IMG/VR virus record: IMGVR_UViG_3300042261_002390
Coordinates: 124,001 to 188,000 of that record
DNA: 64,000 bases
Direction: 5' to 3' (one strand)
Position numbers and translations under genes: made by a program. Positions within the stretch are counted from its first letter, which is position 1. The number at the start of each line of letters is the position of its first letter. The notes below the pieces were generated by a model. The model made no database searches. It had not been told where the DNA came from and saw only the letters and a program-made list of their open reading frames with translations. Below, in pieces: positions 5,228-36,553 of this stretch.

Positions 5228-5256
5228 AAAAGCGCAATAAGAATTGCGCTTTTTTT
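5228..5256 (+). terminator. Intrinsic terminator
   Basis: AAAAGCGCAAT-aaga-ATTGCGCT-TTTTTT hairpin plus U-tract. Confidence 0.85.
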
Positions 5257-5259
5257 ATC

Positions 5260-11950: not shown

Positions 11951-12101
11951 TAAAATTCAAAAAAAGAATATCAATAGAGATTTGAGAAAGTTTAAATACT
12001 TGACATCTATGGGATATACTATATTGTATCTATGGGAATATGATTTAAAACACAATTTAAATGAATGTAAAAATAAATTAAATAGACTGTTATATGAATA
12101 A
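11946..12101 (+). pseudogene. C-terminal relic of a Vsr/DUF559-like endonuclease
   Basis: Start-less frame FDKIQKKNINRDLRKFKYLTSMGYTILYLWEYDLKHNLNECKNKLNRLLYE*. The RD..K...L...GY.IL.LWE.D pattern is typical of Vsr-like nucleases. Not in the ORF track. Confidence 0.75.
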
Positions 12102-21199: not shown

Positions 21200-21231
21200 G
21201 TTTATTAGTATTTATAGTAAAATTTGTTATA

Positions 21232-21630
21232 ATGGTATCATATAATATTAATTTTCCTTTAAGGGATGATGTTTCAACAAATACATTTTTTTTAACCACT
21301 AAAGTTACTAAAGATGCATTTAGTTCCGATTTATTGTTATTGTTGCTCACTCAAAGGGGTGAAAGATATTATGAACCAGACTATGGAACAAATTTATTGA
21401 AATATATTTTTGAGCCGAATGATAACATTACAGCAACTGATGTTGAGCAAGAGATAAAAAGAACCGTATCGTTATATATTCCAGCACTTACTATCAATAA
21501 AGTGTCATTTAATTGGAATTTCGACGATAACGGTAAGCCAATATCAGACAACCAATTAAATGTAAATATTATGTTCACATATACTGAAGATGCATTTAGC
21601 GAAACTGGTTCATTAGATTTAAATTTTTAA
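21232..21630 (+). CDS. Baseplate wedge subunit, T4 gp25/GPW-like
   Basis: LLLLLTQRGERYYEPDYGTNLLKYIFEP signature. GTATTTATA at 21208. Confidence 0.9.
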   Translation: MVSYNINFPLRDDVSTNTFFLTTKVTKDAFSSDLLLLLLTQRGERYYEPDYGTNLLKYIFEPNDNITATDVEQEIKRTVSLYIPALTINKVSFNWNFDDNGKPISDNQLNVNIMFTYTEDAFSETGSLDLNF

Positions 21631-21643
21631 TTAAAATACAAAT

Positions 21644-23491
21644 ATGGCAGCAGAAACAACAAATATTATTAAGTACGGAAGTAGAACATTTGGTGAAATA
21701 CGTACTGATTTAATTTCATTTATCAGACAAACATATCCAACAATATTAAGTGATTTTACCGATTCTAGTATTGGGTCGATGTTGATTGACTTAAATGCTG
21801 GTGTTGGTAATAATCTTAGCGTTAATACTGATAGAGCATTTCAGGAAACACAACTAGAATATGCCCAACAAAGAGCATCAATATTAAATATTGCAAAAAA
21901 TATGGGATTCAATATCCCGGCAAAAAGACCATCAGTTACTGTTGTTGATTTTACTGTACTGATTCCTGTATTGGGTGATAAACCAGATGCATCATATTAT
22001 CCTGTTTTAGATGCAGGAGCACAAATTATCGGCGGTGGTAAAGTATTTGAAACACAAAATGTTATTGATTGGAGTTCTCCATATAGTAGCTTAGGTGACC
22101 CAAATCGCTCAATAATTCCAAATTTGGATTCGAATGGTGTGATTGTGAGCTATAATGTTACCAAGAGAGAAGTTGTTGTTAATGGCACGTCTAGTATATA
22201 TAAGACAATAATTACCAGTAATAATGTTGTTCCCTTTTTCAGCATAACATTACCTGACCCGGATGTTATTGAGATTGAAAGTATAATTCTTCTTGAAGGC
22301 ACGAATTATAACACTAACCCAACTGCTAGTGAATTTAATAATTCCGCTAACAGATATTATGAGGTGGATTACCTAGCGCAACAGAAAGTTTTCGTTGAAA
22401 ATACACAATCGTCACAATTAAATGTTCAAGCAAATGGCGTAAAGGCAGCTCAATGGATTGACGTTACAAAAAAATTCATAAAAGAATTTACTTCGAATGG
22501 TTATTGTAAAGTCACATTTGGTTCGGGGGATTCTGATATTGATGCATTTAAAAGTGGGTTTTTAAAAGAAGGTGTTAGTAATAAATATTTTCTCGAAAAT
22601 TTCTTAAATAATACAGCACTTGGTGAAAAATTGAAAGCAGGTTATACTTTATTTGTTAAATACCGTACTGGTGGTGGTTCAAGTTCAAATATTGGAGCAA
22701 GAGCATTAACTCAATTAGGTAATTATACACTTACTTCAAATGGTTCTCGTCAAGATTATCGACAAAATGTTGTAAGAAGTTTAAAAGTAAATAACCCAAT
22801 CCCGGCAATTGGTGGTAATGATGGTTTAAGTGTAGAACAAATAAGACAATTGATTAAATATAATTTTTCATCACAAATGAGAGATGTTACGTTAACTGAT
22901 TATTTGTTGCAAATATATAAAATGCCGGGTAAGTTTGGTTCGCCATTTAGAGCAAATGCATTAAAATTAGACAACAAGGTAATTATACCAATTTTAGATA
23001 TTGGTGCTGATGGAAAATTGTCAAATACTAGCAATAGTTTATTAAAAGAAAATATTGCAGAATATCTTAGTCAGTATAGAATGATTAATGACTATATTGA
23101 AATCAGAGATGGTAAAATATTTAATCTCGCATTTGATATTGATGTTTATGTTGAAAACATTGCCGATAATCAAATTGCTAATAGTATTATTACAATTGTA
23201 AGAAACTATTTGGATATCAATAATTATGAAATGAATGAGGACATATTTCTCGGAAGATTACAGAAAGAAATTTTAGCAGCAAACGGTGTTATTAACGTTA
23301 TTGAAATTAAGGTATATAATAAACAAGGCGGTAATTACTCCAACAATGTTGTATCACAGGATATTTTAAATACCTCAACAGGTCAAATTAAAATTATTAA
23401 TAACACAATTTATTCGACAGAAGATTCGATGTTTGAAATCAAATATCCTGAAAAGGATATTAGAGTTTTCTTACGTAAAAAGACTGTATAA
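21644..23491 (+). CDS. Baseplate wedge subunit, T4 gp6/baseplate J-like
   Basis: RTF.EIR..L, DF..SSIG.MLID, D....E..L..AQ.R.S..NIAK..G, VTFGSG, YRTGGG, AIGG.D, R.VTL.DY. Confidence 0.9.
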   Translation: MAAETTNIIKYGSRTFGEIRTDLISFIRQTYPTILSDFTDSSIGSMLIDLNAGVGNNLSVNTDRAFQETQLEYAQQRASILNIAKNMGFNIPAKRPSVTVVDFTVLIPVLGDKPDASYYPVLDAGAQIIGGGKVFETQNVIDWSSPYSSLGDPNRSIIPNLDSNGVIVSYNVTKREVVVNGTSSIYKTIITSNNVVPFFSITLPDPDVIEIESIILLEGTNYNTNPTASEFNNSANRYYEVDYLAQQKVFVENTQSSQLNVQANGVKAAQWIDVTKKFIKEFTSNGYCKVTFGSGDSDIDAFKSGFLKEGVSNKYFLENFLNNTALGEKLKAGYTLFVKYRTGGGSSSNIGARALTQLGNYTLTSNGSRQDYRQNVVRSLKVNNPIPAIGGNDGLSVEQIRQLIKYNFSSQMRDVTLTDYLLQIYKMPGKFGSPFRANALKLDNKVIIPILDIGADGKLSNTSNSLLKENIAEYLSQYRMINDYIEIRDGKIFNLAFDIDVYVENIADNQIANSIITIVRNYLDINNYEMNEDIFLGRLQKEILAANGVINVIEIKVYNKQGGNYSNNVVSQDILNTSTGQIKIINNTIYSTEDSMFEIKYPEKDIRVFLRKKTV

Positions 23492-24687
23492 TGGAAGTTA
23501 TAAAAAAAACTATATTACAAGCGTTAATTACAGGTACTACTATTGTGAGTGGTGTCACAAAATATGTTATCATACCTAATCCGGATGCTGTTTATCATAT
23601 GAAAATTGGATTGGACTCAAATTCTGAAGATATTGGTTTTTTTGATGTAATTACTGATTATGTGAGTGGTAGTACAACAACCACAACCAGTACAACAACC
23701 AGTACCAGTACAACTACCACAACTAGTACAACAACCAGTACCAGTACAACTACCACTAATTCACCTAGCTGTAATTTGAACATGACATTAAATATTGGTG
23801 ATGAAAATCTAAATTGGGGTGGTTATTTAGGTAATTACAATAGTAATTATGGTAATATAATTGTTAATTATGGGGATGGAAGTCCATTAGAAACTATAGA
23901 AGCATATGATGATGGAGGAACATGGTTCTATTACATAGAAAAGACTTATGGAAGTACTGGAATATATAATGTATCTATACAACTCCCTATTTGTGACTTA
24001 CCATTTATTAGTTTTGTTAATGCTAATATATCTCAACTAAATATAATAGATTTTCCTAATATTGAGCATTTCGAATTAGTAAATCAATTGGTAGAGTTAA
24101 ACATTCCTGATTTAAACAATTTTAAATCTTTAAAACACTTCTACTTAAATGGTGGTGTATATGAAACTACAGATTTTACAGTATTGCCTTTACTAGAAGA
24201 ATTAAGTATTGGAAGTTCGGATATTACTGGTTTAAATATTAATAATATGGGTTCTTTGTTAATGCTTAGTATAACACAATGTACTGGTATAGCGACTATA
24301 GATGTTGCTGGTTTATATAATCTTCTTGATATAGACATAGTAGATACGCCCATATCTATAAATAATCTTAATGAGTTGACATCAATAACAATTCTACGTT
24401 TAGAGAATGTTAATATGTCTAATATAGACTTAAGTGTAATTCCTTCTCTTGAAATATTCATAGTAGTGAATGGAACGTCTTTTACTGATGTTTTTGATTT
24501 TTCACAATCTCCAAATTTGTATCAAATAGCAATATCTAGTACATCTTTAACTGCGGGAGAAATTGAAACATCCATCTATTCTGTTTATGATAGAACATCA
24601 TTAACACAGGGAAGTGTGTCATTTGCAGAATTCCCATATACACCAACAATACTTAGTTATTTAGCATCCGTAAATTGGACAATATAA
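23491..24687 (+). CDS. Virion structural protein with Thr/Ser linker, PKD-like and LRR-like domains
   Basis: Baseplate operon. ~30-residue T/S tract, VNYGDGS...TYGSTGIYNVSI (PKD-like), repeated LxxLxxLxI units. Confidence 0.7.
   Translation: MEVIKKTILQALITGTTIVSGVTKYVIIPNPDAVYHMKIGLDSNSEDIGFFDVITDYVSGSTTTTTSTTTSTSTTTTTSTTTSTSTTTTNSPSCNLNMTLNIGDENLNWGGYLGNYNSNYGNIIVNYGDGSPLETIEAYDDGGTWFYYIEKTYGSTGIYNVSIQLPICDLPFISFVNANISQLNIIDFPNIEHFELVNQLVELNIPDLNNFKSLKHFYLNGGVYETTDFTVLPLLEELSIGSSDITGLNINNMGSLLMLSITQCTGIATIDVAGLYNLLDIDIVDTPISINNLNELTSITILRLENVNMSNIDLSVIPSLEIFIVVNGTSFTDVFDFSQSPNLYQIAISSTSLTAGEIETSIYSVYDRTSLTQGSVSFAEFPYTPTILSYLASVNWTI
23671..23757 (+). repeat. Thr/Ser-coding tandem repeat (36-nt unit duplicated at 23689-23724 and 23725-23757)
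   Basis: AGTACAACAACCAGTACCAGTACAACTACCAC(AACT) x2. Confidence 0.9.
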
Positions 24688-24698
24688 TATTTAATATA

Positions 24699-25139
24699 AT
24701 GATTATAACCGGAAATACTGAAAGTAGATTAATTGAGCTTAGAAAATATAAGGTAACTAATGTTTTTGAGCAAATGTACGTTAGCGGTGGTACGTTAAGT
24801 AAAGATGGTGTTGATTATTCAGTATCAACATCTAATAGTATTGTTTATTATTTAGGGGGAATTAGGTATTGTGATACAATCACTGGAAGTACGTCCGGAA
24901 CTAGTTATTCATTTACTAGTCAAAGTTATGGAAGTCCTGATTTTATTGATTTACCTTATTATAAAAATCCTAATAAAGAAAATATCATCAGTAATCCAAA
25001 AATAGATGATGATGTATTTATTATAAGACAAGAATCATCAGCGTTTGAAAATAACTATAGGCTTGAGTATGTGAAAAATCTCAATGATTTAATTACATAT
25101 GCTGGTGGTAATTACTTTAAAATTGTAAATAATTCATAA
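24699..25139 (+). CDS. Putative virion structural protein
   Basis: S/T/G-rich ORF in the baseplate operon. Confidence 0.7.
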   Translation: MIITGNTESRLIELRKYKVTNVFEQMYVSGGTLSKDGVDYSVSTSNSIVYYLGGIRYCDTITGSTSGTSYSFTSQSYGSPDFIDLPYYKNPNKENIISNPKIDDDVFIIRQESSAFENNYRLEYVKNLNDLITYAGGNYFKIVNNS

Positions 25140-25140
25140 T

Positions 25141-26049
25141 ATGAGTATTGGAACATATGGTATAGTTAGAGCATCTGATGTCAGTATCAATGATATTGAG
25201 GTATATTATAATTACACGCCGGATAGGTATACTGCAAATAATACTATTTTAAAAATAGATGATGCTACGAGTGTACTTGATTATTGCTATCTCCCAACAA
25301 ATGACCCGAATGCTGTAGGTACTGAAAATTTGTTAGAGGGAATGTATGATTTGAGATTACCAGCATCTATATTTAATCAATTGGGTATATATACAATATA
25401 TATTAAGCCTAAAACAGTTAATTCAGTTATTGTTGATTGCAGTGTTTTATCTGCATTACCATCTATAAGGGGTATTGTTTTAGATATTAATTCATTGCCG
25501 GAAGATTTAAGAGCAAATAATGCAATGCAGGGATATAGAATTGAATATATTAATGCAGATGGAACTAAATTAAGAAATGTTGTACGTTACGTGGTAACTG
25601 CTAATAAAGTATCACCAGTTAGTGAAAATGTCGGTGATACGAATCAAAAAGCAATACGATATAGATTTGATGATTCCGGAACATTGATGTTTTTACAATT
25701 AACACCAAGTAGTTCGTCTGATGTGAAAGCAAACGTAAAGCCATTTATTGGTAATGTTGGGCAAACAATATTAATTACAAATACTTATTTTTCACCAGTT
25801 GTCCTCGAAGTTGAATTAGTTGAAAATACTATTGATACTTTATCAAATATTATTGCAGGGGAACAAATTAAAGACGTAAGTAACGGCATATTAACATATT
25901 ATGATTCAAATAGAGTTATAACAAAACAATTTAATTTGTTTGAAATTAAGGATGATGTTACTAATGTTTCATTATATGAAGTAAAAGAAAAACGGACATA
26001 TATCGATGAAAGTCAAAATTTTGATGATATCGTTAATGAGGTATCTTAA
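25141..26049 (+). CDS. Putative baseplate structural protein
   Basis: 302-aa beta-rich ORF in the baseplate operon. Confidence 0.7.
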   Translation: MSIGTYGIVRASDVSINDIEVYYNYTPDRYTANNTILKIDDATSVLDYCYLPTNDPNAVGTENLLEGMYDLRLPASIFNQLGIYTIYIKPKTVNSVIVDCSVLSALPSIRGIVLDINSLPEDLRANNAMQGYRIEYINADGTKLRNVVRYVVTANKVSPVSENVGDTNQKAIRYRFDDSGTLMFLQLTPSSSSDVKANVKPFIGNVGQTILITNTYFSPVVLEVELVENTIDTLSNIIAGEQIKDVSNGILTYYDSNRVITKQFNLFEIKDDVTNVSLYEVKEKRTYIDESQNFDDIVNEVS

Positions 26050-26076
26050 ACCATATTATATTGACAATTAACTTGA

Positions 26077-26109
26077 GAAAAATCCCGATGTAAAATATTG
26101 GGATTTTTC
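26077..26109 (+). terminator. Intrinsic terminator
   Basis: GAAAAATCCCGAT...ATTGGGATTTTTC. Confidence 0.7.
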
Positions 26110-26143
26110 ATTTTATAGGTATTTATAATAAAAATTTAAGCTT

Positions 26144-29100
26144 GTGGCAAAAGTTAAAGTTATAAATAACAATCTCGACCAAAATTTAAACGGGAACACA
26201 TTCACTAACGTACCATCTGAAACAATATTTTCATTTGGTAAATTTTCGATTACGTCTAATTTTGATGGACGAAAATATATCAATTATTCTGATACTTTAA
26301 GTTCATTCGTTCGTCCAGTAACATTGGAAAATATAGGCATTTCGGATGTTGAATCAGAAATTATCTATCAGTACAATACCAATGCAGTTTTAAATTTAGA
26401 CAAATCAGATTTAAACACTTTCATTAGATTTGGTTCGGCATATGAATTTTTAAGAGTATGTATTGAGAACATTATCCTTACATATCCCGGAAGTATTTTT
26501 ATGAATTCTCAATTGTCGAGAAATAATAATATAACGTATTTTGATTATATATATGACCCGGTAAGTAATTCATCAACATTTAAGATTCCGATGAATTGTG
26601 TTATGAATACATTTGGGTTGGTTTATAATTATGGGAATAATAGTATTCCAGACAATAACGAGCTTAAGAATCTAAATTTTTCGTATGAGAATTATGTGGT
26701 GTGGACATCAATGAATCCTGATGATAATACTAGTAATGTTATCGGTTTCACTGGAAATACCACAGGGAGAAACTATTTAACACTTACTGTTCATGGTAAT
26801 CCGTTTAGTATGATTACTACTGATTCAGCACCGCTTGATTTTCACATCAAGCCTAATAATTATGTTTTTGAAAAATTTAGGGCGGTCTTAAATGAATTTG
26901 AAAAATATATTGTTTCATCTAGAGTGGGTATGAATGGTTTTGAATTTGTTTTGAAAGACCCGACCTTGTTGGATGATGGTAACATTACATATTCGGATAT
27001 TAAATTATTGTGGAATACGTCAGACAAATATAATATTGACATAAACACACCTAACTATCAGAAATTTTTGGAAATTGTTTTAACTGTTGGGGTAAAATAC
27101 GATAAAATTAAAACAGACTTAATTGCAAGATTTTTAACTCCTTCGTCAATTAAGGCATATGACCTTACAGATGAGGGAAAAATGACTAAATTGCTTAGAA
27201 TTTACGGTAGAGAATTCGACCAAATTCGTGAATTTATTGATTCGTTGGTTTATATTAATAAGGTGACGTATGATAAAGTAAACAATGTCCCCGACCAAGT
27301 TGTAAGAAATTTATCAAGAACATTCGGATGGGATTATTTCTCATTGGTTAATGAAACTGAATTGATTGAAAGTTTTTTAACTGTTGATGAAAATGAGAGA
27401 GATTTGAATTCTGATTTATTGCCTGCTGAGATTGATATTGAATTGTGGAGAAGGATTATCATGAACACCAATTATTTTTGGAAAAGTAAAGGCACTAGAG
27501 AAGCCATTAAATCGATGTTTTTATTAATTGGTATTCCCGAGCCATTTATAAATATTACTGAATATGTGTATACTGTTGATGGAAAGATAAATCCAAATAC
27601 TGTACCGTTTTCAATAAATGATTTCCCAACACAATCATTACCATACGATACTGAAGGTTATCCTAAAGCACCAATCGAAGGTAATAATTATTATTTTCAA
27701 ATATCCGGGGATACTGATAACGGTCAAACATATTTTGACTTATTTAGAAAAGTTGGATTTAATTTGATGAGAACGCCAGATAATAAAAAATCTTGGGTTG
27801 AAAGTGGTGCAACTTATCGAATAGACGATTCAACGCCACAATATTATCAATTGGATAGTAAACTTGTCCTTAATACTAAGGAAGTTGATGTTGCTCTTGA
27901 TACTGCAAGAGGTATTGAGTATGATGTATATAACTATATTCAAAAGGATTATGCAATTAATTCTAGTGGATATACATTGCCATACTCATATGTAAATATA
28001 TCATTAGGCGTTAGTGGTTCACAAAACACATTTCCACTTCCATTAAATTATTCTTCTGAGAAGGTTATGGGCGACCTTGAAGTTCGTTTTAATGGTATAT
28101 TATTAAATGCTCCGAAAACAGGAACAACAACCGGAATCACATACCAAGCTGATTATAGTATTGACGAAGTTAGTAAGACATTTACCATCCTTAATGGAAT
28201 ATATGCTAAAAATAATACGTTGAGAAGGGATGTTATACAAGCTACATTTATTTATTCTGGTGGTACTCATTCACTTTCAGGATTATCAGTAAATTATGTT
28301 GTAACTAGGGTTAAGGCTGATGTAAATGGAACTGTAATACCATTGCCGACATATCCACGTGGTGATGTTCAAGTAACTATTAACGGTATTGCATTAACTA
28401 AAGGTACACCACAATTTATCGCAGATTATACACTCGACCCAAATAATTCAACAGGTAGTACAAATAATCAAATTATTATTCAAAATCCTGAAGTTATTGC
28501 ATATTTACAAATAAATCCCGAAATTCAAATTGCATATGTTGAGGTTGAAGGCAGTAATGATATTTATGCAAGAAGTGAAATTGTTAGAGTAGATAGTTTT
28601 AATTCAAGTAAAATATATTTGAATCAATCTGCAAATAAATATGTTTATAGATTGAATTATAAGGCAAATAATGCTTCTGACATTAAAGTGTTAATTGATG
28701 GGATTGCACTTGAACCAAATACCGATTATTCAATAAATGTACAAAATCTATATGAGGTTTTCTTACCAAGAGGTATAAAATACGGAAGTGTGATAAGCGT
28801 CTATTATCTTGTTGGTGCGAATGCGTTGTTTAACCCGGTGATATCTGATGTATTTGGTATTGGTGATATTAGCAATTTATCGTTTTTAGAATTTATTGAT
28901 TTGATTCAAAAAAGATTGGTTAATAGTAGAAATAGAAAAACAATTAGTGATTTTAAGGGTGGTTGGTATCCTACTTTATTGAGAGTATATACCGAATACT
29001 TGAAACGTGCAACATTGCCGGAAGATAATCCATTGCATTCAAATGGTTACACATTTGCTAATTTATATCCATTCTTAAGTAAATATAATGCATTTTTCCA

Positions 29101-30826
29101 AAGATTTGTTGACCAATTGTTATCAGCAACAATTATCTTACGAAGGGGTGGATTAATGGTCAGAAACAGCGTATTTACTAAACAAAAATTTATGTATAGA
29201 AGAGGCGTTAATTTATATGCCAATAATTCAACAACTACTGACAAAAGAGGAAACCCAATGTATGAATATCTTGGCGATGATGATGTGATTTTTAAAATTG
29301 TACAAGATATATTACCTCCTGAACCACCTAATCCACCAACATTATATGTCGATACTATTACAGGTGGTATTGGTAGTATTATTACTGGTGGTGAGAATAT
29401 TTTAGGTATTGAAGTAATTAATAAATATGGCGTTGATTATAGAAAGTGGAACGGTAGCTCTTGGGATACTTGGGTTCGAATAAGCGAATCAGGAACGCTA
29501 ATTTCTGATAGCTATTCAACAACAATATCTGATGTAACCCCAGATACTATGTATGAGTATCGAGCATTTGTTCAATCACCATATACTGGATACACTGGTC
29601 AATCAAAAACAATTACAACACCAGTAGTAGTACCAGACCCGGAAATATTTACAAAGAATGCTTCGGTAACTCAAACAACATTAGCTAGTGGTGGTGAAAA
29701 TATTGTTCGATATGCTGATGCTGATTATTATGGTATGCAATATAGAGTGCTTTACACAAGTACTTGGACTACAGTTCCAGCACCGTTATTGTCCACACCA
29801 TTGGTTACTAATAATTATGATTATCTTATAACTGGTTTGTCGCCGGAAACAGCATATGAATATCGTGCATATATGACCGTTGATGGCGTTCCATATTATG
29901 GTAATACTAAAACGACAGTAACGTCAGCAATTGCACCGACAATACCAACAGTAATTACTGGTGGTGCTCACGATGTGACTGATATTTGTATGCAAATTGG
30001 CGATAATTACGTTAGTGATAAGGGAAATGCTTGCATCACTGAATATGGCGTATTATACACTCAAAATCCCGCATATAGCTGTGCGTCATGTTTGGTCTAT
30101 GGTAATACACCTACATATGTGTGCAAAAAATCAATATCAAGTGATATTGGGGTGGGAACATGTTATTTCCCCGATGGTGTTCAATCAATTATTAATTTAG
30201 ACCCAAACACTCAAACATATTATAGAGCATATGCCACAAATAGTGTGGGCGTTGGATATGGATGTGTTAATTCTCAAGCTACATGCGTGTCATCAACAGT
30301 TCATACAGTATATTTAAGTGACGGTAATTACAATTCGTGTTCGATTTCAGCAGTTAATTCGTGTGCTAAAATTGTTATTGAGCCACCATTAACCCCGGGA
30401 CAAAGTTTTACATTATCTTACAGTAATAATGCATGCTCGACTACAGATACTGTAACTAGATTAATGTCAACATGCTCTTTTGTTTGTTGTGGTATTAATA
30501 AATTAGATTGTGCCAGTACAAATATCCCAGATAATTATAGTGCTTGTTCGTGTGATGTATCTGATAATAAGGTAGGAACAATAAATATCGACTATGCTAC
30601 TAATTTAAGTGATATTACATTTTATACGATAGCAAATAGTCACACATCGAACGCTTGTTTAGATTATAATAATTGTGCATCGACATGCATTACATCAATA
30701 AGCAATCCTGTTAATGGTACATTCCAAATTTCAGGAGATTTAAACAATCAATATATGTGCATTTATACCGCCAGTAATTTCACCGGAAATGAAAGTGGTG
30801 GTTTTGTACCATTTGAGATTGCATGA
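26144..30826 (+). CDS. Large baseplate/tail protein with FN3-like repeats and Cys-rich C-terminus
   Basis: IWRR-like ELWRRI..N..YFWKSKGTREAI (wedge/P2 gpI-like motif), three FN3-like units (TPDTMYEYRAF, LSPETAYEYRAY, LDPNTQTYYRAYATNSVG). GTG start after GTATTTATA. Confidence 0.8.
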   Translation: MAKVKVINNNLDQNLNGNTFTNVPSETIFSFGKFSITSNFDGRKYINYSDTLSSFVRPVTLENIGISDVESEIIYQYNTNAVLNLDKSDLNTFIRFGSAYEFLRVCIENIILTYPGSIFMNSQLSRNNNITYFDYIYDPVSNSSTFKIPMNCVMNTFGLVYNYGNNSIPDNNELKNLNFSYENYVVWTSMNPDDNTSNVIGFTGNTTGRNYLTLTVHGNPFSMITTDSAPLDFHIKPNNYVFEKFRAVLNEFEKYIVSSRVGMNGFEFVLKDPTLLDDGNITYSDIKLLWNTSDKYNIDINTPNYQKFLEIVLTVGVKYDKIKTDLIARFLTPSSIKAYDLTDEGKMTKLLRIYGREFDQIREFIDSLVYINKVTYDKVNNVPDQVVRNLSRTFGWDYFSLVNETELIESFLTVDENERDLNSDLLPAEIDIELWRRIIMNTNYFWKSKGTREAIKSMFLLIGIPEPFINITEYVYTVDGKINPNTVPFSINDFPTQSLPYDTEGYPKAPIEGNNYYFQISGDTDNGQTYFDLFRKVGFNLMRTPDNKKSWVESGATYRIDDSTPQYYQLDSKLVLNTKEVDVALDTARGIEYDVYNYIQKDYAINSSGYTLPYSYVNISLGVSGSQNTFPLPLNYSSEKVMGDLEVRFNGILLNAPKTGTTTGITYQADYSIDEVSKTFTILNGIYAKNNTLRRDVIQATFIYSGGTHSLSGLSVNYVVTRVKADVNGTVIPLPTYPRGDVQVTINGIALTKGTPQFIADYTLDPNNSTGSTNNQIIIQNPEVIAYLQINPEIQIAYVEVEGSNDIYARSEIVRVDSFNSSKIYLNQSANKYVYRLNYKANNASDIKVLIDGIALEPNTDYSINVQNLYEVFLPRGIKYGSVISVYYLVGANALFNPVISDVFGIGDISNLSFLEFIDLIQKRLVNSRNRKTISDFKGGWYPTLLRVYTEYLKRATLPEDNPLHSNGYTFANLYPFLSKYNAFFQRFVDQLLSATIILRRGGLMVRNSVFTKQKFMYRRGVNLYANNSTTTDKRGNPMYEYLGDDDVIFKIVQDILPPEPPNPPTLYVDTITGGIGSIITGGENILGIEVINKYGVDYRKWNGSSWDTWVRISESGTLISDSYSTTISDVTPDTMYEYRAFVQSPYTGYTGQSKTITTPVVVPDPEIFTKNASVTQTTLASGGENIVRYADADYYGMQYRVLYTSTWTTVPAPLLSTPLVTNNYDYLITGLSPETAYEYRAYMTVDGVPYYGNTKTTVTSAIAPTIPTVITGGAHDVTDICMQIGDNYVSDKGNACITEYGVLYTQNPAYSCASCLVYGNTPTYVCKKSISSDIGVGTCYFPDGVQSIINLDPNTQTYYRAYATNSVGVGYGCVNSQATCVSSTVHTVYLSDGNYNSCSISAVNSCAKIVIEPPLTPGQSFTLSYSNNACSTTDTVTRLMSTCSFVCCGINKLDCASTNIPDNYSACSCDVSDNKVGTINIDYATNLSDITFYTIANSHTSNACLDYNNCASTCITSISNPVNGTFQISGDLNNQYMCIYTASNFTGNESGGFVPFEIA

Positions 30827-30865
30827 TTTATAAAATAAATTGTATTTATAGTAAAATAATATAAA

Positions 30866-32665
30866 ATGGCATTTATTGAAAAAGAAAACCCTGTTGTGTT
30901 GAATATAATGTTAACTTCTAAGGGTAGAGAACAATTATCTACTGGAAATTTAACATTCAGTTATTTTGCTATTGGTGATAGTGAAATGGATTATAATTTT
31001 ATTCGAGAAGTTAATGCTGACCCAAATGTTGACCCTAAATACGTGTCGTTTGATTCTAGCATATTAAGACCAAAAGATAAGAATCCTAAAATCATTTCAT
31101 TTGTGCCAAGAAATTTGAGTGGTGACCCATATAATGAGATAGCAACAATATCGCCCATATCATATGATGTGGTAAATACAGCAAACCCAATTGGATTTTT
31201 TAGTGGAAATACTTTTATAATCGATGCATTACATGTTAAGCAGCCGGACATGATGATATACATGAGTGGTGCTACAGGTGGAACATCGTTATCAATACGA
31301 AAAGCACCTACTTTCGGTGCTAGTGGGAATGAACCAGCAATAAATGATTTATTGTTTGTGAAATGGAGTGCTGATGTCGATACTACCGGGCACACAATTA
31401 ATGATAATCTACCAACACCATATTTGATGTATCAAATTGTTGATAAAACGGGTACTTTGGCTGCAAATACATTAAAGGTTATTGTTGATAGAGAACTGCC
31501 TGATTTTAGTGCGTTTTCTCCTTCAAATGTTTCTGGGGCATTGTTATATTATAGTGGTTTAACATCACCTCATCAAATGTCACCCGATTATTTAACAGAA
31601 AGTGTTTTAGATTTTTTTAATAACTACCAATGTACAATTGATGCATATCCTTTTTGGAATATGACAATGGTGTATACTGAAGAATTAGCTGGGATACAAG
31701 CTGCCGATAGAAAATATACTCAATTTAATAGTAGGACATATGGTGGGTTTGTATCATACATTCAAAATCAATCACCAGTATATAAAAAATTGGGTATCAT
31801 ACACTATACAAATAATTCTCCGGCGAATACGTATGGTGAAGAATTTTATTTAAATACACCAACCATAACTATCCCAACAATTATGTGGCATAAAGCAAGT
31901 ACAACTAAATTAGGTGTTAGTTTTAGTGCGATTGGGAATGTTAAATTATTAACTGGCGATACTGTATCATTAAACATTGAATATTATGATTTGGGTGATA
32001 CTGATGGTAATATTATTGGTAAAGTATTCCCGGGACTTAAAATATTTGTCATTGAAGACCAAGAATTGTTGTTTGCTATGTCGTATAAGTCAAATAGGTC
32101 TTGGACACTACCAAATTATTTAGTGGGTGGTGGTAGTGGTATTATTCCTTGCCCAACTACAAGTACAACAACTACAACAACTACGGCAGGTCCTGTTATC
32201 CCGACAACTACTACAACTAGTACAACTACTACAAGCACAACTAGTACAAGTACAACTTCTACTAGTACAAGCACAACTAGTACAACTTCTACAAGTACTA
32301 GTACGACCTCTACAAGTACAACAACAACATTACCACCCGTAAAAACATTGGATGTTGTTAGCGTTGGAACACCTGATACTACATTAGATTATGGTATTAC
32401 ATTATCAAATACTACTGGCTCACCGATAACATTTAGATTACAAATATCGAATGAAACGCAAGCTGCTGGTGTATTCCATAATAGTGGTCAAATTATTGTA
32501 CCTGCTGGTACAGTTAATCAATATTATAGTGGTACGATTACTGGTTTCCCATTCTCTAATGCAAATGGCGATACAATTGATGCTAATTTGAGTGATGATG
32601 ATGGTGTGACATGGACTGCTTCATTTAATTTTGACCCACCATATACTTTGCCATATGGTGCATAA
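30866..32665 (+). CDS. Tail/baseplate protein with tail-collar-like N-terminus and long mucin-like Thr/Ser tract
   Basis: MLTSKGREQL...YFAIGDSE N-terminus, ~55-residue T/S tract, small beta-rich terminal domain. Confidence 0.75.
   Translation: MAFIEKENPVVLNIMLTSKGREQLSTGNLTFSYFAIGDSEMDYNFIREVNADPNVDPKYVSFDSSILRPKDKNPKIISFVPRNLSGDPYNEIATISPISYDVVNTANPIGFFSGNTFIIDALHVKQPDMMIYMSGATGGTSLSIRKAPTFGASGNEPAINDLLFVKWSADVDTTGHTINDNLPTPYLMYQIVDKTGTLAANTLKVIVDRELPDFSAFSPSNVSGALLYYSGLTSPHQMSPDYLTESVLDFFNNYQCTIDAYPFWNMTMVYTEELAGIQAADRKYTQFNSRTYGGFVSYIQNQSPVYKKLGIIHYTNNSPANTYGEEFYLNTPTITIPTIMWHKASTTKLGVSFSAIGNVKLLTGDTVSLNIEYYDLGDTDGNIIGKVFPGLKIFVIEDQELLFAMSYKSNRSWTLPNYLVGGGSGIIPCPTTSTTTTTTTAGPVIPTTTTTSTTTTSTTSTSTTSTSTSTTSTTSTSTSTTSTSTTTTLPPVKTLDVVSVGTPDTTLDYGITLSNTTGSPITFRLQISNETQAAGVFHNSGQIIVPAGTVNQYYSGTITGFPFSNANGDTIDANLSDDDGVTWTASFNFDPPYTLPYGA
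32155..32329 (+). repeat. Low-complexity Thr/Ser-coding repeat
   Basis: Repeated ACTAGTACAA(C/G) units encoding TTSTTTTTTT...TTTTTSTTTTSTTSTSTTSTSTSTTSTTSTSTSTTSTSTTT. Confidence 0.9.
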
Positions 32666-32669
32666 AATC

Positions 32670-32701
32670 CTTGCAAATTAGCTAATTATTTTGTAGTTTT
32701 G
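32670..32701 (+). promoter_or_regulatory. Bacteroidota sigma-type promoter for the glycosylation cassette
   Basis: CTTG-N20-TAGTTTTG, with the ATG only 4 nt downstream. Confidence 0.7.
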
Positions 32702-32705
32702 TATT

Positions 32706-33707
32706 ATGAAAGAATTAAGATTTGTAAGTGCTCAACCTGCTACGGACTATTATGCGTGGCAGGTTGAAGTAATGATTAATAATTTCCTTGAAATGGGAAT
32801 TAATGGAAATTATATCGATATAATTTGTATGATAAATAATAACGTGATTCCCGAAAAATGGTCGAAATTAGCTAATCATTATAATTTTGTTCGTTTCTTT
32901 TTTTATAATGATACTAGAAAATTAAAATTCTATCCATCTTCAACAAGACCAAATGCATTAAAACAACATTGGTTAACAAGACCAGAATTATTAGAGAATC
33001 ATATATTTTATCATGATTGTGATATTGTATTTACTAAGCCAATAGATTGGTCTAAGTTTTTGGATGACGATAATAAATGGTATGGGTCTGATACTCGTTG
33101 GTATATTTCTCATGATTATATCATATCAAAAGGTGAGGATATATTGGATAAAATGTGTGGAATTGTTGATATTGACAAGCAAATTGTAAAAGATAACGAA
33201 TTAAATAGTATTGGCGCACAATATTTAATGAAAGATATTGATTGGCAATTTTGGGATAGGGTTGAGCGTGATTCAGAACGATTATTTAAAGAAATTACCG
33301 ACATTAACAATTACAAAATATTCCTAGATAATCAAAGAATTGCTGATGAAAAAGCTAAAGGCATTAATGGATTACCACCATATCATCCATTACAAATATG
33401 GTGTGCTGACATGTGGGCAGTATTATGGAATGGATGGAAAATGGGTAAAGAAACGATTTGTAGTGAAGAATTACAATTTGCATGGGCAACGTCAGGTGAG
33501 GATGATTGGCATAAATTCAATATTTTTCATAATGCAGGAGTCACTGAAGAAATAAAAGCTACTGCGGAAAAGGAAGGATTATTTTATAAAGCAGATTATA
33601 TGAATAAACTACCATATAATGAAGAATTAAAAATTAAACCCCGCACTACAAGTTTAAAGTATTGGGAAATAATTAAGAAAACCGCAAAAAAATCAGTTTT
33701 ATTGTAA
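32706..33707 (+). CDS. GT-A glycosyltransferase resembling plant peptidyl-serine galactosyltransferase (SERGT1, GT96)/HPAT (GT95)
   Basis: Ordered motifs DYYAWQ, YPSSTRPNAL..HW, IFYHDCDIVF.KP (DxD), WCADMWA. Confidence 0.65.
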   Translation: MKELRFVSAQPATDYYAWQVEVMINNFLEMGINGNYIDIICMINNNVIPEKWSKLANHYNFVRFFFYNDTRKLKFYPSSTRPNALKQHWLTRPELLENHIFYHDCDIVFTKPIDWSKFLDDDNKWYGSDTRWYISHDYIISKGEDILDKMCGIVDIDKQIVKDNELNSIGAQYLMKDIDWQFWDRVERDSERLFKEITDINNYKIFLDNQRIADEKAKGINGLPPYHPLQIWCADMWAVLWNGWKMGKETICSEELQFAWATSGEDDWHKFNIFHNAGVTEEIKATAEKEGLFYKADYMNKLPYNEELKIKPRTTSLKYWEIIKKTAKKSVLL

Positions 33708-33708
33708 T

Positions 33709-34362
33709 ATGGAAAGAATAATACACCAAATTTGGGTTGGTTCTTATGAAATGCCCGAGAGAGAAAAATATTTTATGAAAAGGGTTAAAGAATTAAACCC
33801 TACATTTCAACATATGTTGTGGAATGATAATAATTTACCAAACCTACCTGATAAAATTAAAACACTTTGTGATGCGTTTAGAAAACAAAAAGATTATGCT
33901 CATATTGCTGATGTTTTGAGAATATTCCTCGTTAAAGAGTATGGTGGATTGTATATTGATGTGGATTTTAAACCGATGAAACCATTTACATTGTTTGATA
34001 ACAACAATAACTCAATGTTTGTATGTTATCATGGTGGTAATGATTATACTATGCCTAATGGTGTATTCGGTGGCAAAAAAAATTCAGAACAAGTAAATTT
34101 TATATATGAGTTAGTTGATATTGGAAAAAGTGGATGGTATGGACCTAGTTGGCTGGGTGGTGCAGTAAAACAATATTTAAAACTAGATTATGAAACAAAT
34201 CATGATATAGTTAAAATAAAATGTGCTGAAAACAATATCGATTACTGTTTATTTCCTGAGTTTGAGACATATTTCAAGCATTTAGCATTATATTCTTGGT
34301 CACCGGAAAATAAGAGAAATTTTGAAAATGGAAATATAAATTATTTAGAATGGACGAGATAG
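33709..34362 (+). CDS. Glycosyltransferase family 32 (Och1-like, DxD)
   Basis: RIIHQIWVG, LWND, YAHIADVLR, EYGGLYIDVD. Confidence 0.9.
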   Translation: MERIIHQIWVGSYEMPEREKYFMKRVKELNPTFQHMLWNDNNLPNLPDKIKTLCDAFRKQKDYAHIADVLRIFLVKEYGGLYIDVDFKPMKPFTLFDNNNNSMFVCYHGGNDYTMPNGVFGGKKNSEQVNFIYELVDIGKSGWYGPSWLGGAVKQYLKLDYETNHDIVKIKCAENNIDYCLFPEFETYFKHLALYSWSPENKRNFENGNINYLEWTR

Positions 34363-34970
34363 AAAAGATATTTTCTGGTGATAATCATTTATATGGTAGA
34401 ACCGATATTGATAATTTTAGCGTATCTGGATGTGGGTCTCAAATGGATGACTCCACATTAAACGTTAGAAATAATTTATATCAATTTTTAAATAAACATG
34501 GGATTAATAGTATTGCTGATATACCGTGTGGTGATTACTGGTGGATGAGGCATGTTAAATTATTTGAGATTGAATATATTGGTGGTGATATAATAACACC
34601 ACAAATTCAAAAAATGAAAAAAAACTTTCCATACGTTGATTTTAGAAGAATTGATATTCGATTAGACAAACTACCAACTGTCGATTTATTATTTTGTCGA
34701 GATTGTTTATTTCATTTTAGCTCAGTTGATAAGAAAATGGCATTACATAATTTTATAAATTCAGACATCAAATACATTCTAATGAGTAATCACCCTCTTT
34801 CAAATAAAAATAACGACATTGTTACGGGTGATTTTACACATATTAACTGGCGACTAGAACCGTGGAATTTTGGATTACCGATTGATATATTATATGATAG
34901 TAATGTAGGATATGATACTAAAGAATTACAACTTTACACAAAAAATCAAATTATTGAATTTTTATTATGA
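34350..34970 (+). CDS. Class I SAM-dependent methyltransferase
   Basis: SGCGS, SIADIPCGD..W, YIGGDI, DLLFCRDCLFHF. Confidence 0.88.
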   Translation: MDEIEKIFSGDNHLYGRTDIDNFSVSGCGSQMDDSTLNVRNNLYQFLNKHGINSIADIPCGDYWWMRHVKLFEIEYIGGDIITPQIQKMKKNFPYVDFRRIDIRLDKLPTVDLLFCRDCLFHFSSVDKKMALHNFINSDIKYILMSNHPLSNKNNDIVTGDFTHINWRLEPWNFGLPIDILYDSNVGYDTKELQLYTKNQIIEFLL

Positions 34971-35773
34971 ATAAAAGAGTTAGTTTTGTTTGTACAACAT
35001 ATAGAAGGTTTAGATGTGTTGAAAGAATTTTATTGCAATGCCGGGCACAAACATATCAAAATAAAGAATTGATTATCTTTAACACTGATGTTGAATATCC
35101 AATTACAATTGGATTTGATGATGTAAATATTGTGATTGTTAATAATAATACTGATTATCAAACCGGGAAACCTTATGAAAATAGAGGTCAAATTTGTCGT
35201 GATGCTGTAACACATGCAACAGGTGATTATTTCATGCTTGCAGATGATGATGATATTTATTTGCCTTGGCATCTTCAACAAGCTGTTGAGGGGATTGAAG
35301 AATTAGGTACTGATGCATGGAAACCGCAAAAGAGCTTATTCGCTACAAAGGAAAAGATTGAGTTATGCCAGAATACATTAGAAGCGAGTGTGATTGTTAA
35401 AATGCCTAGAATCAGGCAAATTGGGTTTAGAAGTGATATTACCGGATATGAGGGGTTAAGCTGGTATACTAAATTAAGAGATGAAGGTCAGTTGAATGAA
35501 AACAATTTGAATTATGTCCCATCATATTGTTTTAATTGGAGCGACCCACATGAACTTGCAGGACATAAGCAAAGCGGTGATATTAACAACCCCAATAATT
35601 TTGAAAACCATAAAAATGCCTCAAAGGATGTTGCTACGAAACCGTTGGAAATTAAATGCTTATGTGAATTAAATAATGTGTATGATAAATATTATGACTG
35701 GTTACAATCGAACTCAAATATTTTGAACACCGATTACTATGAAAGATATGTGAGGCAATTTATAACTAATTAA
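34967..35773 (+). CDS. Glycosyltransferase family 2
   Basis: VSFVCTTYRR, QTYQNKELII, ATGDYFMLADDDDIYLPWHL. Confidence 0.9.
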   Translation: MNKRVSFVCTTYRRFRCVERILLQCRAQTYQNKELIIFNTDVEYPITIGFDDVNIVIVNNNTDYQTGKPYENRGQICRDAVTHATGDYFMLADDDDIYLPWHLQQAVEGIEELGTDAWKPQKSLFATKEKIELCQNTLEASVIVKMPRIRQIGFRSDITGYEGLSWYTKLRDEGQLNENNLNYVPSYCFNWSDPHELAGHKQSGDINNPNNFENHKNASKDVATKPLEIKCLCELNNVYDKYYDWLQSNSNILNTDYYERYVRQFITN

Positions 35774-35806
35774 AATTATCAGTATTTATAGTAAATTTGA
35801 TTAACA

Positions 35807-36553
35807 ATGGCAATTGGTTATACAGTATTTACATCATATCTTTTAGAATCATATAGTGGATACAGCACTGCAGTTCACTGTAACTATATTAATTCATTAT
35901 TTTTAGATACAGCATATCCACAAATGCAAGAAGTATCGATTAGCTTTACAAATCCAAATGATTTTAAGTTTCTAAGTAATGATATTAATGCTGGAACTGG
36001 ATTTACTGCAAATAAAATCTATGCACTTATTCAGGTGGTTGATAATTTATTATTTGATAGTGTATCAAATGTTAAACCAACTGCTTCAGGGTGGACTAAA
36101 TATGATATTACTAATCAAATCACCGGGTATGTTTCAGGTAGTTTATTAACTGCAACGGGATTAACAAATCAAGTATTTAAAATTCCGTTACAACATTATT
36201 ATGATGACCCTGCAACATTATTTACTGCATATAACTTACATGACTATATTCAATATCCAACCAAAGAGGCATCTGATGATAATGATTTATGCTTTGGCGA
36301 TGAATTATTTTTCATGGGAAATGTTTCAACACAAATTAAAGCTGTTGCATATACTACTGATTTATCAATCAATTTACCTTTAAATGAATTCAATTCTTCC
36401 ACTAATGCAACATGGAATGAGGATAAGGTTTCAATTACTGAAATCGGCATTTATGACGCTAATAAAAACCTCGTTGCAATCGGAAAATTGAATAATCCAA
36501 TTGAAAAAGATTCAACAATTGCTAGGACTATTGTATTCTCTTTAGATTTCTAA
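35807..36553 (+). CDS. Tail/baseplate protein with tail-collar-like C-terminal motif
   Basis: ITEIGIYDANKNLVAIGKLNNPIEK...VFSLDF. GTATTTATA at 35782. Confidence 0.75.
   Translation: MAIGYTVFTSYLLESYSGYSTAVHCNYINSLFLDTAYPQMQEVSISFTNPNDFKFLSNDINAGTGFTANKIYALIQVVDNLLFDSVSNVKPTASGWTKYDITNQITGYVSGSLLTATGLTNQVFKIPLQHYYDDPATLFTAYNLHDYIQYPTKEASDDNDLCFGDELFFMGNVSTQIKAVAYTTDLSINLPLNEFNSSTNATWNEDKVSITEIGIYDANKNLVAIGKLNNPIEKDSTIARTIVFSLDF

What the first reader, a model, noticed from the sequence alone, without database searches (positions are those of the whole stretch)
23491..36553. Two structural genes appear split at the point where a T/S linker plus accessory domain was grafted on
30866 starts with the N-terminal half of a tail-collar-like motif (LTSKGREQL..FAIGD). 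The matching C-terminal half (ITEIGIYD..LVAIGK..PI.K) is in 35807, on the other side of the glycosylation cassette and with its own late promoter. Similarly, 23491 has ~60 aa of structural-looking sequence, then a T/S tract and a PKD/LRR module, and 24699 resumes structural-type sequence. Inference: display modules on glycosylatable stalks were inserted twice, splitting ancestral single genes.
Basis: inference. Interest (0 to 1): 0.6.

Follow-up and report, generated by a model that had tools for sequence, protein, structure and literature searches.

The report
Two phage baseplate genes split in two
In this large uncultivated phage, two tail-baseplate proteins that relatives encode as single genes are each encoded as two genes, cut at a surface loop where extra display domains get attached; the pieces are predicted to snap back together.

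Summary
Both gene pairs are halves of proteins that relatives encode as one ORF.

Pair 2 (23491 + 24699): many relatives have one 205-305 aa ORF. It joins the conserved first ~55 residues of 23491, through a short variable linker, to all of 24699. In split relatives the N-terminal piece carries varied cargo or none. The fused/split state changes at least 4 times among 14 loci.

Pair 1 (30866 + 35807): 108 of the 150 best cluster representatives are single 630-930 aa ORFs covering both. An AlphaFold2 model of a fused homologue (pLDDT 90) aligns to small phage fibre-adaptor proteins across both its termini.

The causal claim is only partly right. The 30866/35807 split is shared by the window's whole clade. 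50 of 120 clade members have no extension, and only 5 of 54 extensions have a strong T/S tract. The T/S stalk, the display domain and the glycosyltransferase cassette are later additions at an already split site. One clade member has re-fused.

Both protein families are uncharacterised, and binding and function remain predictions.

The parts
21232..21630 (+). gp25-like baseplate wedge subunit; first gene of the transcription unit holding pair 2.
   Evidence: phrog_261 at 4.5e-17 and phrog_43 at 5.1e-11. A promoter-like motif lies at 21208-21221.
21644..23491 (+). gp6 / gpJ-like baseplate wedge subunit (615 aa), directly upstream of pair 2.
   Evidence: phrog_219 at 1.4e-20. Weak Pfam Gp6-like_1st match. 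73-83% identical in relatives.
23491..23655 (+). Conserved N-terminal piece (aa 1-55) of ORF 23491. It equals the N-terminal segment of the single fused gene in relatives.
   Evidence: It aligns to residues 1-~55 of the fused ORFs of L010, L011, L020, L026 and L030. About 100 of the 120 best database hits are fused.
23662..23769 (+). T/S tract (aa 58-93) of ORF 23491.
   Evidence: At least 10 of 12 residues are S/T across the tract.
23770..24687 (+). Accessory module of ORF 23491: a PKD-like motif, then leucine-rich repeats, then the stop codon.
   Evidence: NYGDGS motif at aa 126-131. PF23952 LRR_EndoS at E 6e-4 to 1.7e-3, below the cut-off. The module is absent from fused relatives.
24699..25139 (+). 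ORF 24699 (146 aa). It equals the C-terminal part of the single fused gene in relatives.
   Evidence: 53-70% identical to the C-terminal 146 aa of fused ORFs and to stand-alone 145-151 aa ORFs. The ATG at 24699 matches the start of stand-alone homologues.
25141..30826 (+). Two conserved structural genes (302 aa and 1560 aa) lying between the two split pairs. They are syntenic in all relatives.
   Evidence: A promoter-like motif lies at 26119-26132.
30866..32119 (+). Conserved core (aa 1-418) of ORF 30866. It equals the N-terminal ~450 aa of the fused family and carries the N-terminal motif half at aa 16-38.
   Evidence: More than 1500 homologues at 56-92% identity. It aligns to residues 1-447 of the fused L013 protein. 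The interface with 35807 was predicted.
32150..32335 (+). T/S tracts (aa 429-442 and 445-490) of ORF 30866.
32336..32665 (+). C-terminal accessory domain of ORF 30866 (~110 aa); no family match.
   Evidence: No Pfam family. The position is occupied by fn3, Ig-like or other domains, or by nothing, in relatives.
32706..35773 (+). Four-gene cassette between the halves of pair 1: an unknown 333-aa protein, a DXD glycosyltransferase, a weak methyltransferase-like protein and a GT2 glycosyltransferase.
   Evidence: PF04488 at 1.9e-13, PF00535 at 2.9e-7 and PF13649 at 0.0022. The cassette is absent in L009, L010, L011 and the 89-kb JGI contig, where the halves are adjacent.
35782..35795 (+). Promoter-like motif upstream of 35807.
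   Evidence: Exact copy of GTATTTATAGTAAA. It is present before the 35807 homologue only where a cassette intervenes (L004, L007, L008). It is absent where the halves are adjacent (L009-L011).
35807..36553 (+). ORF 35807 (248 aa). It equals the C-terminal ~245 aa of the fused family and carries the C-terminal motif half at aa 210-234.
   Evidence: More than 400 stand-alone homologues of 235-288 aa. Residues 63-248 align to residues 531-713 of the fused L013 protein. Interface predicted.

Best explanation
Both pairs are true gene fissions of baseplate-module proteins. In each case the cut lies in a permissive, variable loop between two conserved parts.

Pair 1 (30866 + 35807):
- The ancestral form within this family is one ~650-750 aa protein.
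- Its first ~50 and last ~80 residues appear to fold together into one small beta-sandwich domain. That domain resembles phage fibre-adaptor and whisker proteins.
- At the base of the window's clade the gene was cut at about residue 450.
- The two products are predicted to reassemble into the same body through a very large interface.
- The cut left a free C-terminus on the first half. Lineages then repeatedly hung different extensions on it: nothing, fn3 or Ig-like domains, or giant extensions. Here the extension is a T/S stalk plus a ~110-aa domain.
- The new intergenic gap became a landing site for paralogues and glycosyltransferase genes. With that, 35807 acquired its own promoter.

Pair 2 (23491 + 24699):
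- The common form is one ~215-aa protein encoded just after the gp6-like wedge gene.
- It has a ~55-aa N-terminal segment, a variable linker and a 146-aa domain.
- The linker is a hot spot. In different, sometimes very closely related, phages it is short, long, or interrupted.
- Interruptions include a module that ends in a stop codon, a whole extra gene, or just a stop and restart.
- In the window the N-terminal segment therefore acts as an anchor for a T/S stalk plus PKD-like/LRR cargo. The 146-aa domain is made separately.

What is shown and what is inferred:
- Shown: fused homologues exist, the cut positions are as described, and the states are distributed on the trees as reported.
- Predicted: the fold and the re-association.
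- Inferred: location in the baseplate, the display or adhesion role of the cargo, and glycosylation of the stalks.
For: Pair 2:
- Single ORFs of 214-270 aa in L010, L011, L020, L026 and L030 cover 23491[1-55] and 24699[2-146].
- About 100 of the 120 best hits to a fused query are full-length fused. Nine are stand-alone 147-148 aa.
- A tree of the flanking gp6 and 302-aa proteins needs at least 4 state changes in 14 loci. L025 (split with an Ig-like module) and L026 (fused) are nearly identical in their flanks.
- L025 has ~395 extra nt exactly between residue 52 and the start of the second gene.

Pair 1:
- 108 of the 150 best 50%-cluster representatives are fused end to end, as in L013 4812-6953.
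- The E-part tree, rooted on the L016/L017 homologues, puts the split clade (20 rows, SH 100) nested inside fused lineages.
- AF2 of the fused protein gives pLDDT 90.2 and pTM 0.85.
- Small phage proteins align to a range of the model spanning both termini:
  - 8jou_a: Z 6.6, 113 aligned.
  - 9euf_b: Z 6.5, 110 aligned.
  - 9xpg_A: Z 6.2, 131 aligned.
  - 9c39_K: Z 5.5, 93 aligned.
- The complex model of 30866(1-430) + 35807 scores ipSAE 0.77 against a best control of 0.00. That mark was reached by 58 of 80 solved complexes and 2 of 110 mismatched pairs. The runs share at least 66% of contacts and the partner pLDDT is at least 77.
- In that model, residues 32-35 touch 214-216, and residues 415-419 touch 25-27 and 45-47.
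- A second, independent fission with extensions on both sides occurs in L036.
- Fused relatives P0442 and P0449 carry ~300-aa inserts at the same boundary.
- P0032 is a re-fused form nested in the split clade.
Against: - No experiment supports any of this. Binding and fold are model outputs.
- The complex score used my own alignments, so its calibration holds only roughly.
- The fold matches have middling Z scores of 5.5-6.6, and only first and last aligned residues are reported.
- The E-part trees are FastTree only, because the mixture-model search did not finish.
- The outgroup phages L016/L017 themselves encode the two parts as separate genes. The deeper ancestral state may therefore have been 'separate'.
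- For pair 2 the direction of change cannot be rooted.
- The AF2 model of the fused pair-2 protein is poor outside residues 70-145 (pLDDT 66.8). Whether the 55-aa piece touches the 146-aa domain is unknown.
- The assignment to the baseplate rests on gene order next to the gp25-like and gp6-like genes only.
Confidence: 0.72

Rival explanations
1. One reading: each fission was caused by insertion of a T/S stalk plus display module that brought its own stop codon. On this view graft and split are one event.
For: - The cut point and the graft point coincide in both pairs.
- In pair 2, four lineages carry different modules ending in a stop right before the second gene: the window, L001, L019 and L025.
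- L025 differs from its near-twin L026 by exactly such a segment.
- L036 shows a pair-1 fission with extensions on both sides of the cut.
Against: - The pair-1 fission is clade-wide. It is present in 50 of 120 members without any extension, and only 5 of 54 extensions are strongly T/S-rich.
- Adjacent core-only pairs exist.
- Fused proteins tolerate ~300-aa inserts at the same site without splitting (P0442, P0449).
- Bare splits of pair 2 exist in L027 and L029.
Confidence: 0.25
2. Reversed polarity: the two-gene state is ancestral for both pairs, and the single ORFs of relatives are secondary fusions.
For: - The most distant homologues found (L016, L017) encode the two pair-1 parts as separate adjacent genes.
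- One clear secondary fusion exists: P0032, nested in the split clade.
- Adjacent halves are separated by only ~23 nt in L009 and L010, so fusion by a small indel is easy.
Against: - With L016/L017 as outgroup, all basal in-group lineages are fused and the split clade is nested. Reversal would therefore need many independent fusions.
- For pair 2, the fused linker is short and the split forms carry unrelated cargos. That fits several independent interruptions of one gene better.
Confidence: 0.15
3. Artefact: the splits are sequencing or assembly frameshifts, or pseudogenes, in single genes.
For: - One relative (L035) does look like a frameshift inside the second part.
- The IMG/VR copy of this locus (L018) has the gp6-like gene in two pieces, whereas the window has it intact.
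Against: - The halves of pair 1 are 3.1 kb apart, with four genes and a promoter motif between them.
- Hundreds of independent contigs have the same two-gene arrangement with proper starts.
- Stand-alone 147-148 aa homologues of 24699 come from several sources.
- Both halves remain 55-70% conserved.
Confidence: 0.02
4. The halves are rejoined after transcription or translation, for example by an intron, a split intein or a programmed frameshift, so the virion still contains single chains.
For: In L029 the two pair-2 ORFs are only 3 nt apart in different frames, so a frameshift is conceivable.
Against: - In the window the pair-1 gap holds expressed-looking genes and a promoter.
- In the pair-2 gap of L027 all frames are closed by stops.
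- I saw no intein-like sequence in the translations at either junction, but ran no dedicated intein or intron search.
Confidence: 0.03

Closest known systems
Phage tail-collar fibre N-terminal domain (Pfam DUF3751, as in P2 gpH); this comparison rests on my recollection of the family's motifs.
   Same: An N-terminal strand-helix motif ending in G-D, and a later 'GIYD...LIAIGK..P..K'-type motif, that together make one small sandwich used to attach fibres.
   Different: There is no Pfam match for either half or for ten fused homologues. Here ~580 residues of other domains lie between the two motif halves. In the window they are on two polypeptides.
Small solved phage fibre-adaptor, whisker and baseplate proteins: 8jou_a (GP4 fiber-tail adaptor entry), 9c39_K (Sf14 neck), 9euf_b (phi812 baseplate), 9xpg_A (phiKZ gp139).
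   Same: They align structurally to the fused model with 93-131 residues aligned, and the aligned range runs from the first ~25 residues to the last residue. The Sf14 neck entry holds whisker and adapter proteins that anchor fibres (PMC11821841).
   Different: Z is only 5.5-6.6 and sequence identity 13-17%. Those proteins are contiguous single domains. No function of the present family is known.
Conserved contractile-tail baseplate wedge core: T4 gp25, gp6, gp7 and gp53; P2 gpW, gpJ and gpI (from general knowledge of these systems).
   Same: Gene order. A gp25-like gene, then a gp6-like gene, then the small pair-2 protein in the position where P2 has gpI.
   Different: The pair-2 protein has no sequence or fold match to anything: no Pfam or PHROG family and VIA Z of at most 4.
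Gene fission and fusion, and modular C-terminal exchange, in phage tail-fibre and tailspike genes (general knowledge).
   Same: Conserved N-terminal anchoring parts with swapped distal domains. There are tandem paralogues with different distal parts, such as 472 and 2461 aa in L001.
   Different: Here the fission cuts through a globular body, so that one domain appears to be built from two chains. The same site is seen fused, fused with an insert, split, and re-fused within one family.

Membership tests
Gene fission (two adjacent or nearby genes derived from one) | Homologues exist as one ORF covering both parts colinearly. | tested here: met
   Pair 2: L010, L011, L020, L026, L030 and ~100 database proteins. 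Pair 1: L013 and 108 of 150 representatives.
Gene fission (two adjacent or nearby genes derived from one) | Both parts are kept as intact, conserved, separately startable ORFs in many independent genomes. | tested here: met
   More than 1500 and more than 400 homologues for pair 1. Stand-alone 145-151 aa ORFs and 72-860 aa N-terminal pieces for pair 2.
Gene fission (two adjacent or nearby genes derived from one) | The split state is derived relative to the fused state. | tested here: inconclusive
   Pair 1: the split clade is nested inside fused lineages in an outgroup-rooted FastTree. However, the outgroup itself is two genes, and the careful search did not finish. Pair 2: at least 4 changes on an unrooted tree.
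Gene fission (two adjacent or nearby genes derived from one) | The products re-associate. | tested here: inconclusive
   Pair 1: the model supports binding, with ipSAE 0.77 against a best control of 0.00. That mark was reached by 58 of 80 solved complexes and 2 of 110 mismatched pairs. This is a prediction only.
Pfam DUF3751 phage tail-collar fibre domain | A match to the family profile. | tested here: not met
   No Pfam family at E up to 0.1 for 30866 or 35807. None at E up to 1 for ten fused homologues.
Pfam DUF3751 phage tail-collar fibre domain | One small sandwich domain built from an N-terminal and a later segment. | tested here: inconclusive
   Small phage adaptor-type chains align across both termini of the fused model at Z 5.5-6.6. 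No DUF3751 structure was among the listed matches.
T4 gp6 / P2 gpJ baseplate wedge (ORF 21644) | A profile match. | tested here: met
   phrog_219 at 1.4e-20. Pfam PF21379 reached only 15.5 bits, below its cut-off of 27.
P2 gpI / T4 gp7-N / TssG-type wedge protein (pair 2) | A sequence or fold match to the family. | tested here: not met
   No Pfam or PHROG family. The best structural Z is 4.0, to unrelated folds, and the model is poor. Only the gene position fits.
Leucine-rich repeat domain (module of 23491) | A profile match above the curated cut-off. | tested here: inconclusive
   PF23952 at 19-20.4 bits against a cut-off of 27.9. The repeat pattern is visible in the translation.
PKD domain (module of 23491) | A profile match. 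| tested here: not met
   No PKD family reported. Only the NYGDGS-type motif is present.
Glycosyltransferases (cassette) | A profile match above the curated cut-off. | tested here: met
   PF04488 at 51.3 bits (cut-off 23) for 33709-34362. PF00535 at 31 bits (cut-off 23.3) for 34967-35773. ORF 32706 has no family and ORF 34350 only a weak methyltransferase match.

The most novel reading that the evidence does not exclude
The fissions are not accidents but a reusable display system. The ~55-aa N-terminal piece of pair 2 and the ~420-aa core of pair 1 would act as docking tags that place any C-terminally attached cargo on the baseplate. Observed cargos include LRR, cadherin-like, Ig-like and fn3 domains, giant adhesin-like extensions and glycosylated stalks. 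The separately made partner chain would complete the fold. The conserved sequences on either side would serve as recombination arms for swapping cargo cassettes between co-infecting phages. This would be a natural split-protein 'plug-and-display' scaffold.
Probability: 0.3. Interest if true: 0.7.

Novelty: new variant of a known kind. Interest (0 to 1): 0.55.

Why it matters
**A rare natural series.** One protein family shows the same site in every state:
- fused;
- fused with an insert;
- split;
- split with cargo;
- re-fused.

This shows how a tail-machine protein can be cut at a surface loop without losing its assembly. It also shows how that frees an end for new host-binding or display domains.

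**Annotation.** The small ORFs next to gp6-like genes, and the 240-250 aa ORFs near these fibre-anchor genes, are halves of larger proteins. They should be analysed together.

**Engineering.** The predicted two-chain domain, and the 55-aa piece if it does dock in the baseplate, are candidate handles for attaching foreign domains to a phage baseplate.

**Limits.** Both families are widespread in uncultivated large phages; related contigs reach 320-370 kb. Neither has any known function or solved structure.

Tried and rejected
**Searches that found nothing**
- tblastn of both pair-1 proteins against 50,697 deposited phage genomes gave no match.
- Sequence searches of the PDB with single proteins and with the fused-family profile gave no match.
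- Pfam and PHROGs found no family for 24699, for the 30866 core, or for the fused proteins. For 35807, Pfam found nothing and PHROGs gave only weak hits to families of unknown function, the best at E 0.0012.
- Foldseek of the fused model against the PDB found nothing at E below 1e-3.
- BFVD gave only an uncharacterised fused homologue, with TM 0.80.
- AF2 of the fused pair-2 protein gave a poor model (pLDDT 66.8). Its fold search gave only Z of 4 or less, to unrelated folds.

**Steps that failed**
- The mixture-model tree of 137 E-part rows did not finish in two runs, so FastTree was used instead.

**Ideas considered and rejected**
- T4-type TATAAATA late promoters: the hits are scattered, and those near these genes are simply the reverse complement of the real motif.
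- Intron, intein or frameshift rejoining: see the rival explanations.
- Assembly artefact: see the rival explanations.

**Not done**
- Read mapping and run searches.

Full report
**Setting**

The window is ~30% G+C and reads as part of a large tailed phage.
- ORF 21232 is a gp25-like baseplate wedge subunit, and ORF 21644 a gp6-like one.
- Downstream, all on the + strand, lie 23491 (398 aa), 24699 (146 aa), 25141 (302 aa), 26144 (1560 aa) and 30866 (599 aa). Four genes follow at 32706-35773, and then 35807 (248 aa).
- Related contigs reach 320-370 kb.
- None of the proteins in question matches deposited phage genomes.

**The observation**

- The two motif halves lie at aa 16-38 of 30866 and aa 210-234 of 35807.
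- The T/S tracts lie at nt 23662-23769 and 32150-32335.
- In 23491 the conserved N-terminal stretch is ~55 aa.
- The LRR call is weak, below the Pfam cut-off. The PKD call rests on a motif only.
- Two of the four cassette genes are Pfam-supported glycosyltransferases.
- The promoter idea holds as a sequence fact. GTATTTATAGTAAA occurs 7 times, all on the + strand, against 0.16 expected. Copies lie before 21232, 26144, 30866 and 35807.

**Pair 2 (23491 + 24699)**

A survey of related loci shows a single ORF in many relatives.
- L011 (215 aa), L030 (215), L026 (214), L020 (255) and L010 (270) each have one ORF.
- That ORF begins with the same ~55 residues as 23491. After a variable linker it continues with the whole of 24699.
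- A database search with the fused L011 protein found 324 relatives. About 100 of the best 120 are full-length fused forms of 204-305 aa. Nine are stand-alone 147-148 aa forms.

Where the gene is split, what follows the 55-aa piece differs from phage to phage.

| Locus | What follows the 55-aa piece |
|---|---|
| Window | T/S tract plus LRR module |
| L001 | T/S tract, then a separate 407-aa protease-like ORF |
| L019 | 860-aa protein with a cadherin-like domain |
| L025 | Ig-like domain, also found in the 1560-aa protein |
| L021, L022, L032 | A separate gene (DUF6734 by Pfam in L021) |
| L027, L029 | Nothing |

On a tree of the flanking proteins the state changes at least 4 times among 14 loci.
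- L025 (split) and L026 (fused) are near-twins.
- L025 has ~395 extra nt exactly between residue 52 and the start of the second gene.

The site is a recurrent hot spot. The direction of each change cannot be rooted, and bare splits show that a module is not required.

The identity of this protein stays open.
- It has no family and no fold match.
- AF2 is confident only for residues 70-145 of the fused form.
- Only its position after the gp6-like gene suggests a wedge component.

**Pair 1 (30866 + 35807)**

In the window's own clade the two are separate genes.
- The core of 30866 (aa 1-~425) has more than 1500 homologues at 56-92% identity.
- Of the 120 best homologues, 50 are core only and the rest carry varied extensions.
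- 35807 has more than 400 homologues. The 120 best are all 235-288 aa.
- In relatives with no extension and no cassette the genes are adjacent but separate: 435+239, 442+242 and 439+242 aa. They are ~23 nt apart with no promoter motif between them.

A more distant branch, at ~33% identity, encodes both parts in one ORF, as in L013 4812-6953 (713 aa).
- An exhaustive profile-free search with that protein found 511 representatives.
- 108 of the best 150 cover it end to end.
- Some of these carry ~200-300 aa inserts. In P0442 and P0449 the insert is exactly at the boundary.

A FastTree of the first part was rooted on the still more distant L016/L017 homologues.
- It puts the window's split clade as one clade (SH 100) nested within fused lineages.
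- L036 is a second, independent fission, with extensions on both sides of the cut.
- P0032 is a fused form nested inside the split clade, sister to a split form at SH 98. This is a secondary re-fusion with a 22-aa linker.

**Do the halves form one domain?**

- AF2 of the fused protein is confident: pLDDT 90.2 and pTM 0.85.
- In a search of 48,161 solved chains, several small phage proteins aligned with 93-131 residues. The aligned range ran from about residue 9-25 to residue 711-713 of the model:
  - GP4 fibre-adaptor entry;
  - Sf14 neck;
  - phi812 baseplate;
  - phiKZ gp139.
- That pattern is what a domain built from both termini would give.
- The Z scores are middling (5.5-6.6), so this is a lead, not proof.
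- The complex model of the window's own 30866(1-430) and 35807 supports binding.
  - ipSAE is 0.77 over three runs, against a best control of 0.00.
  - That mark was reached by 58 of 80 solved complexes and 2 of 110 mismatched pairs.
  - The runs share at least 66% of contacts, and the partner pLDDT is at least 77.
  - I supplied my own alignments, so the calibration holds only roughly.
Residues 415-419 of 30866 also contact residues 25-27 and 45-47 of 35807. The cut ends therefore sit together.
- There is no Pfam match to the tail-collar family, so membership there is not supported.

**Order of events**

For pair 1 the evidence favours this sequence:
1. Fission at the base of the clade.
2. 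Repeated decoration of the freed C-terminus, and tandem duplication of the first half (472+2461 aa in L001, 937+724 in L004).
3. Insertion of glycosyltransferase genes into the gap, with a promoter for the now distant second half.

The T/S stalk is a minority feature: 5 of 54 extensions. It remains possible, but unproven, for pair 2.

**Caveats**

- All function is inferred.
- The trees for pair 1 are FastTree only.
- The outgroup is itself two genes, so the deep ancestral state is open.
- The pair-2 pieces were not modelled together.
- No reads tools and no alternative genetic codes were used.

Noticed in passing
window 3294, 16073, 17342, 21208, 26119, 30842, 35782 (all + strand): A 14-nt promoter-like motif, GTATTTATAGTAAA (1 mismatch allowed), lies 15-25 nt before the start codons of structural genes. 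There are 7 hits against 0.16 expected. It also occurs in related loci.
   Followed up: partly
L001 10001-18829; L004 1072-6106; L007 2334-6767: The 30866-type core is tandemly duplicated in relatives. Each copy has a different C-terminal extension, one reaching 2461 aa.
   Followed up: partly
L001 2150-3849; L023 903-4158: A T-rich linker ending in NTLF[TI]HIP plus a stop codon is followed by a 407-420 aa ORF with a GDSGS serine-protease-like motif. In L001 this sits behind the pair-2 N-terminal piece. In L023 it sits behind a 30866-type core. It looks like a cassette shared between the two anchors.
   Followed up: no
L021 5126-5998; also L022 and L032: A whole ~290-aa gene sits between the two pair-2 halves in three relatives. 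The L021 copy matches DUF6734 at 2.7e-17; the L022 and L032 ORFs look similar by eye but were not scanned.
   Followed up: partly
window 29300-30826; L011 7152-9986; L025 5408-5998: Domains of the C-terminal part of the 1560-aa protein recur elsewhere. They form the extension of the 30866 homologue in L011 and the cargo of the pair-2 piece in L025. Modules are thus shared among three baseplate genes.
   Followed up: no
L018 2331-4149 against window 21644-23491: The IMG/VR copy of this locus has the gp6-like gene in two overlapping ORFs (516 and 124 aa). In the window it is one intact 615-aa ORF. This is probably an indel error in one assembly.
   Followed up: no
window 5244-6545, 12094-13719, 17389-18771: Other genes in the window: a transposase-like gene (phrog_506, 4.8e-118), a tRNA nucleotidyltransferase (2.7e-56) and a further glycosyltransferase-like protein (1.5e-34).
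   Followed up: no
L008 7993-9975: In one relative the homologue of the first cassette gene (32706) is part of a 660-aa fusion protein. It lies between a core-only 30866 homologue and the 35807 homologue. The cassette can therefore be present without any extension on the core.
   Followed up: no
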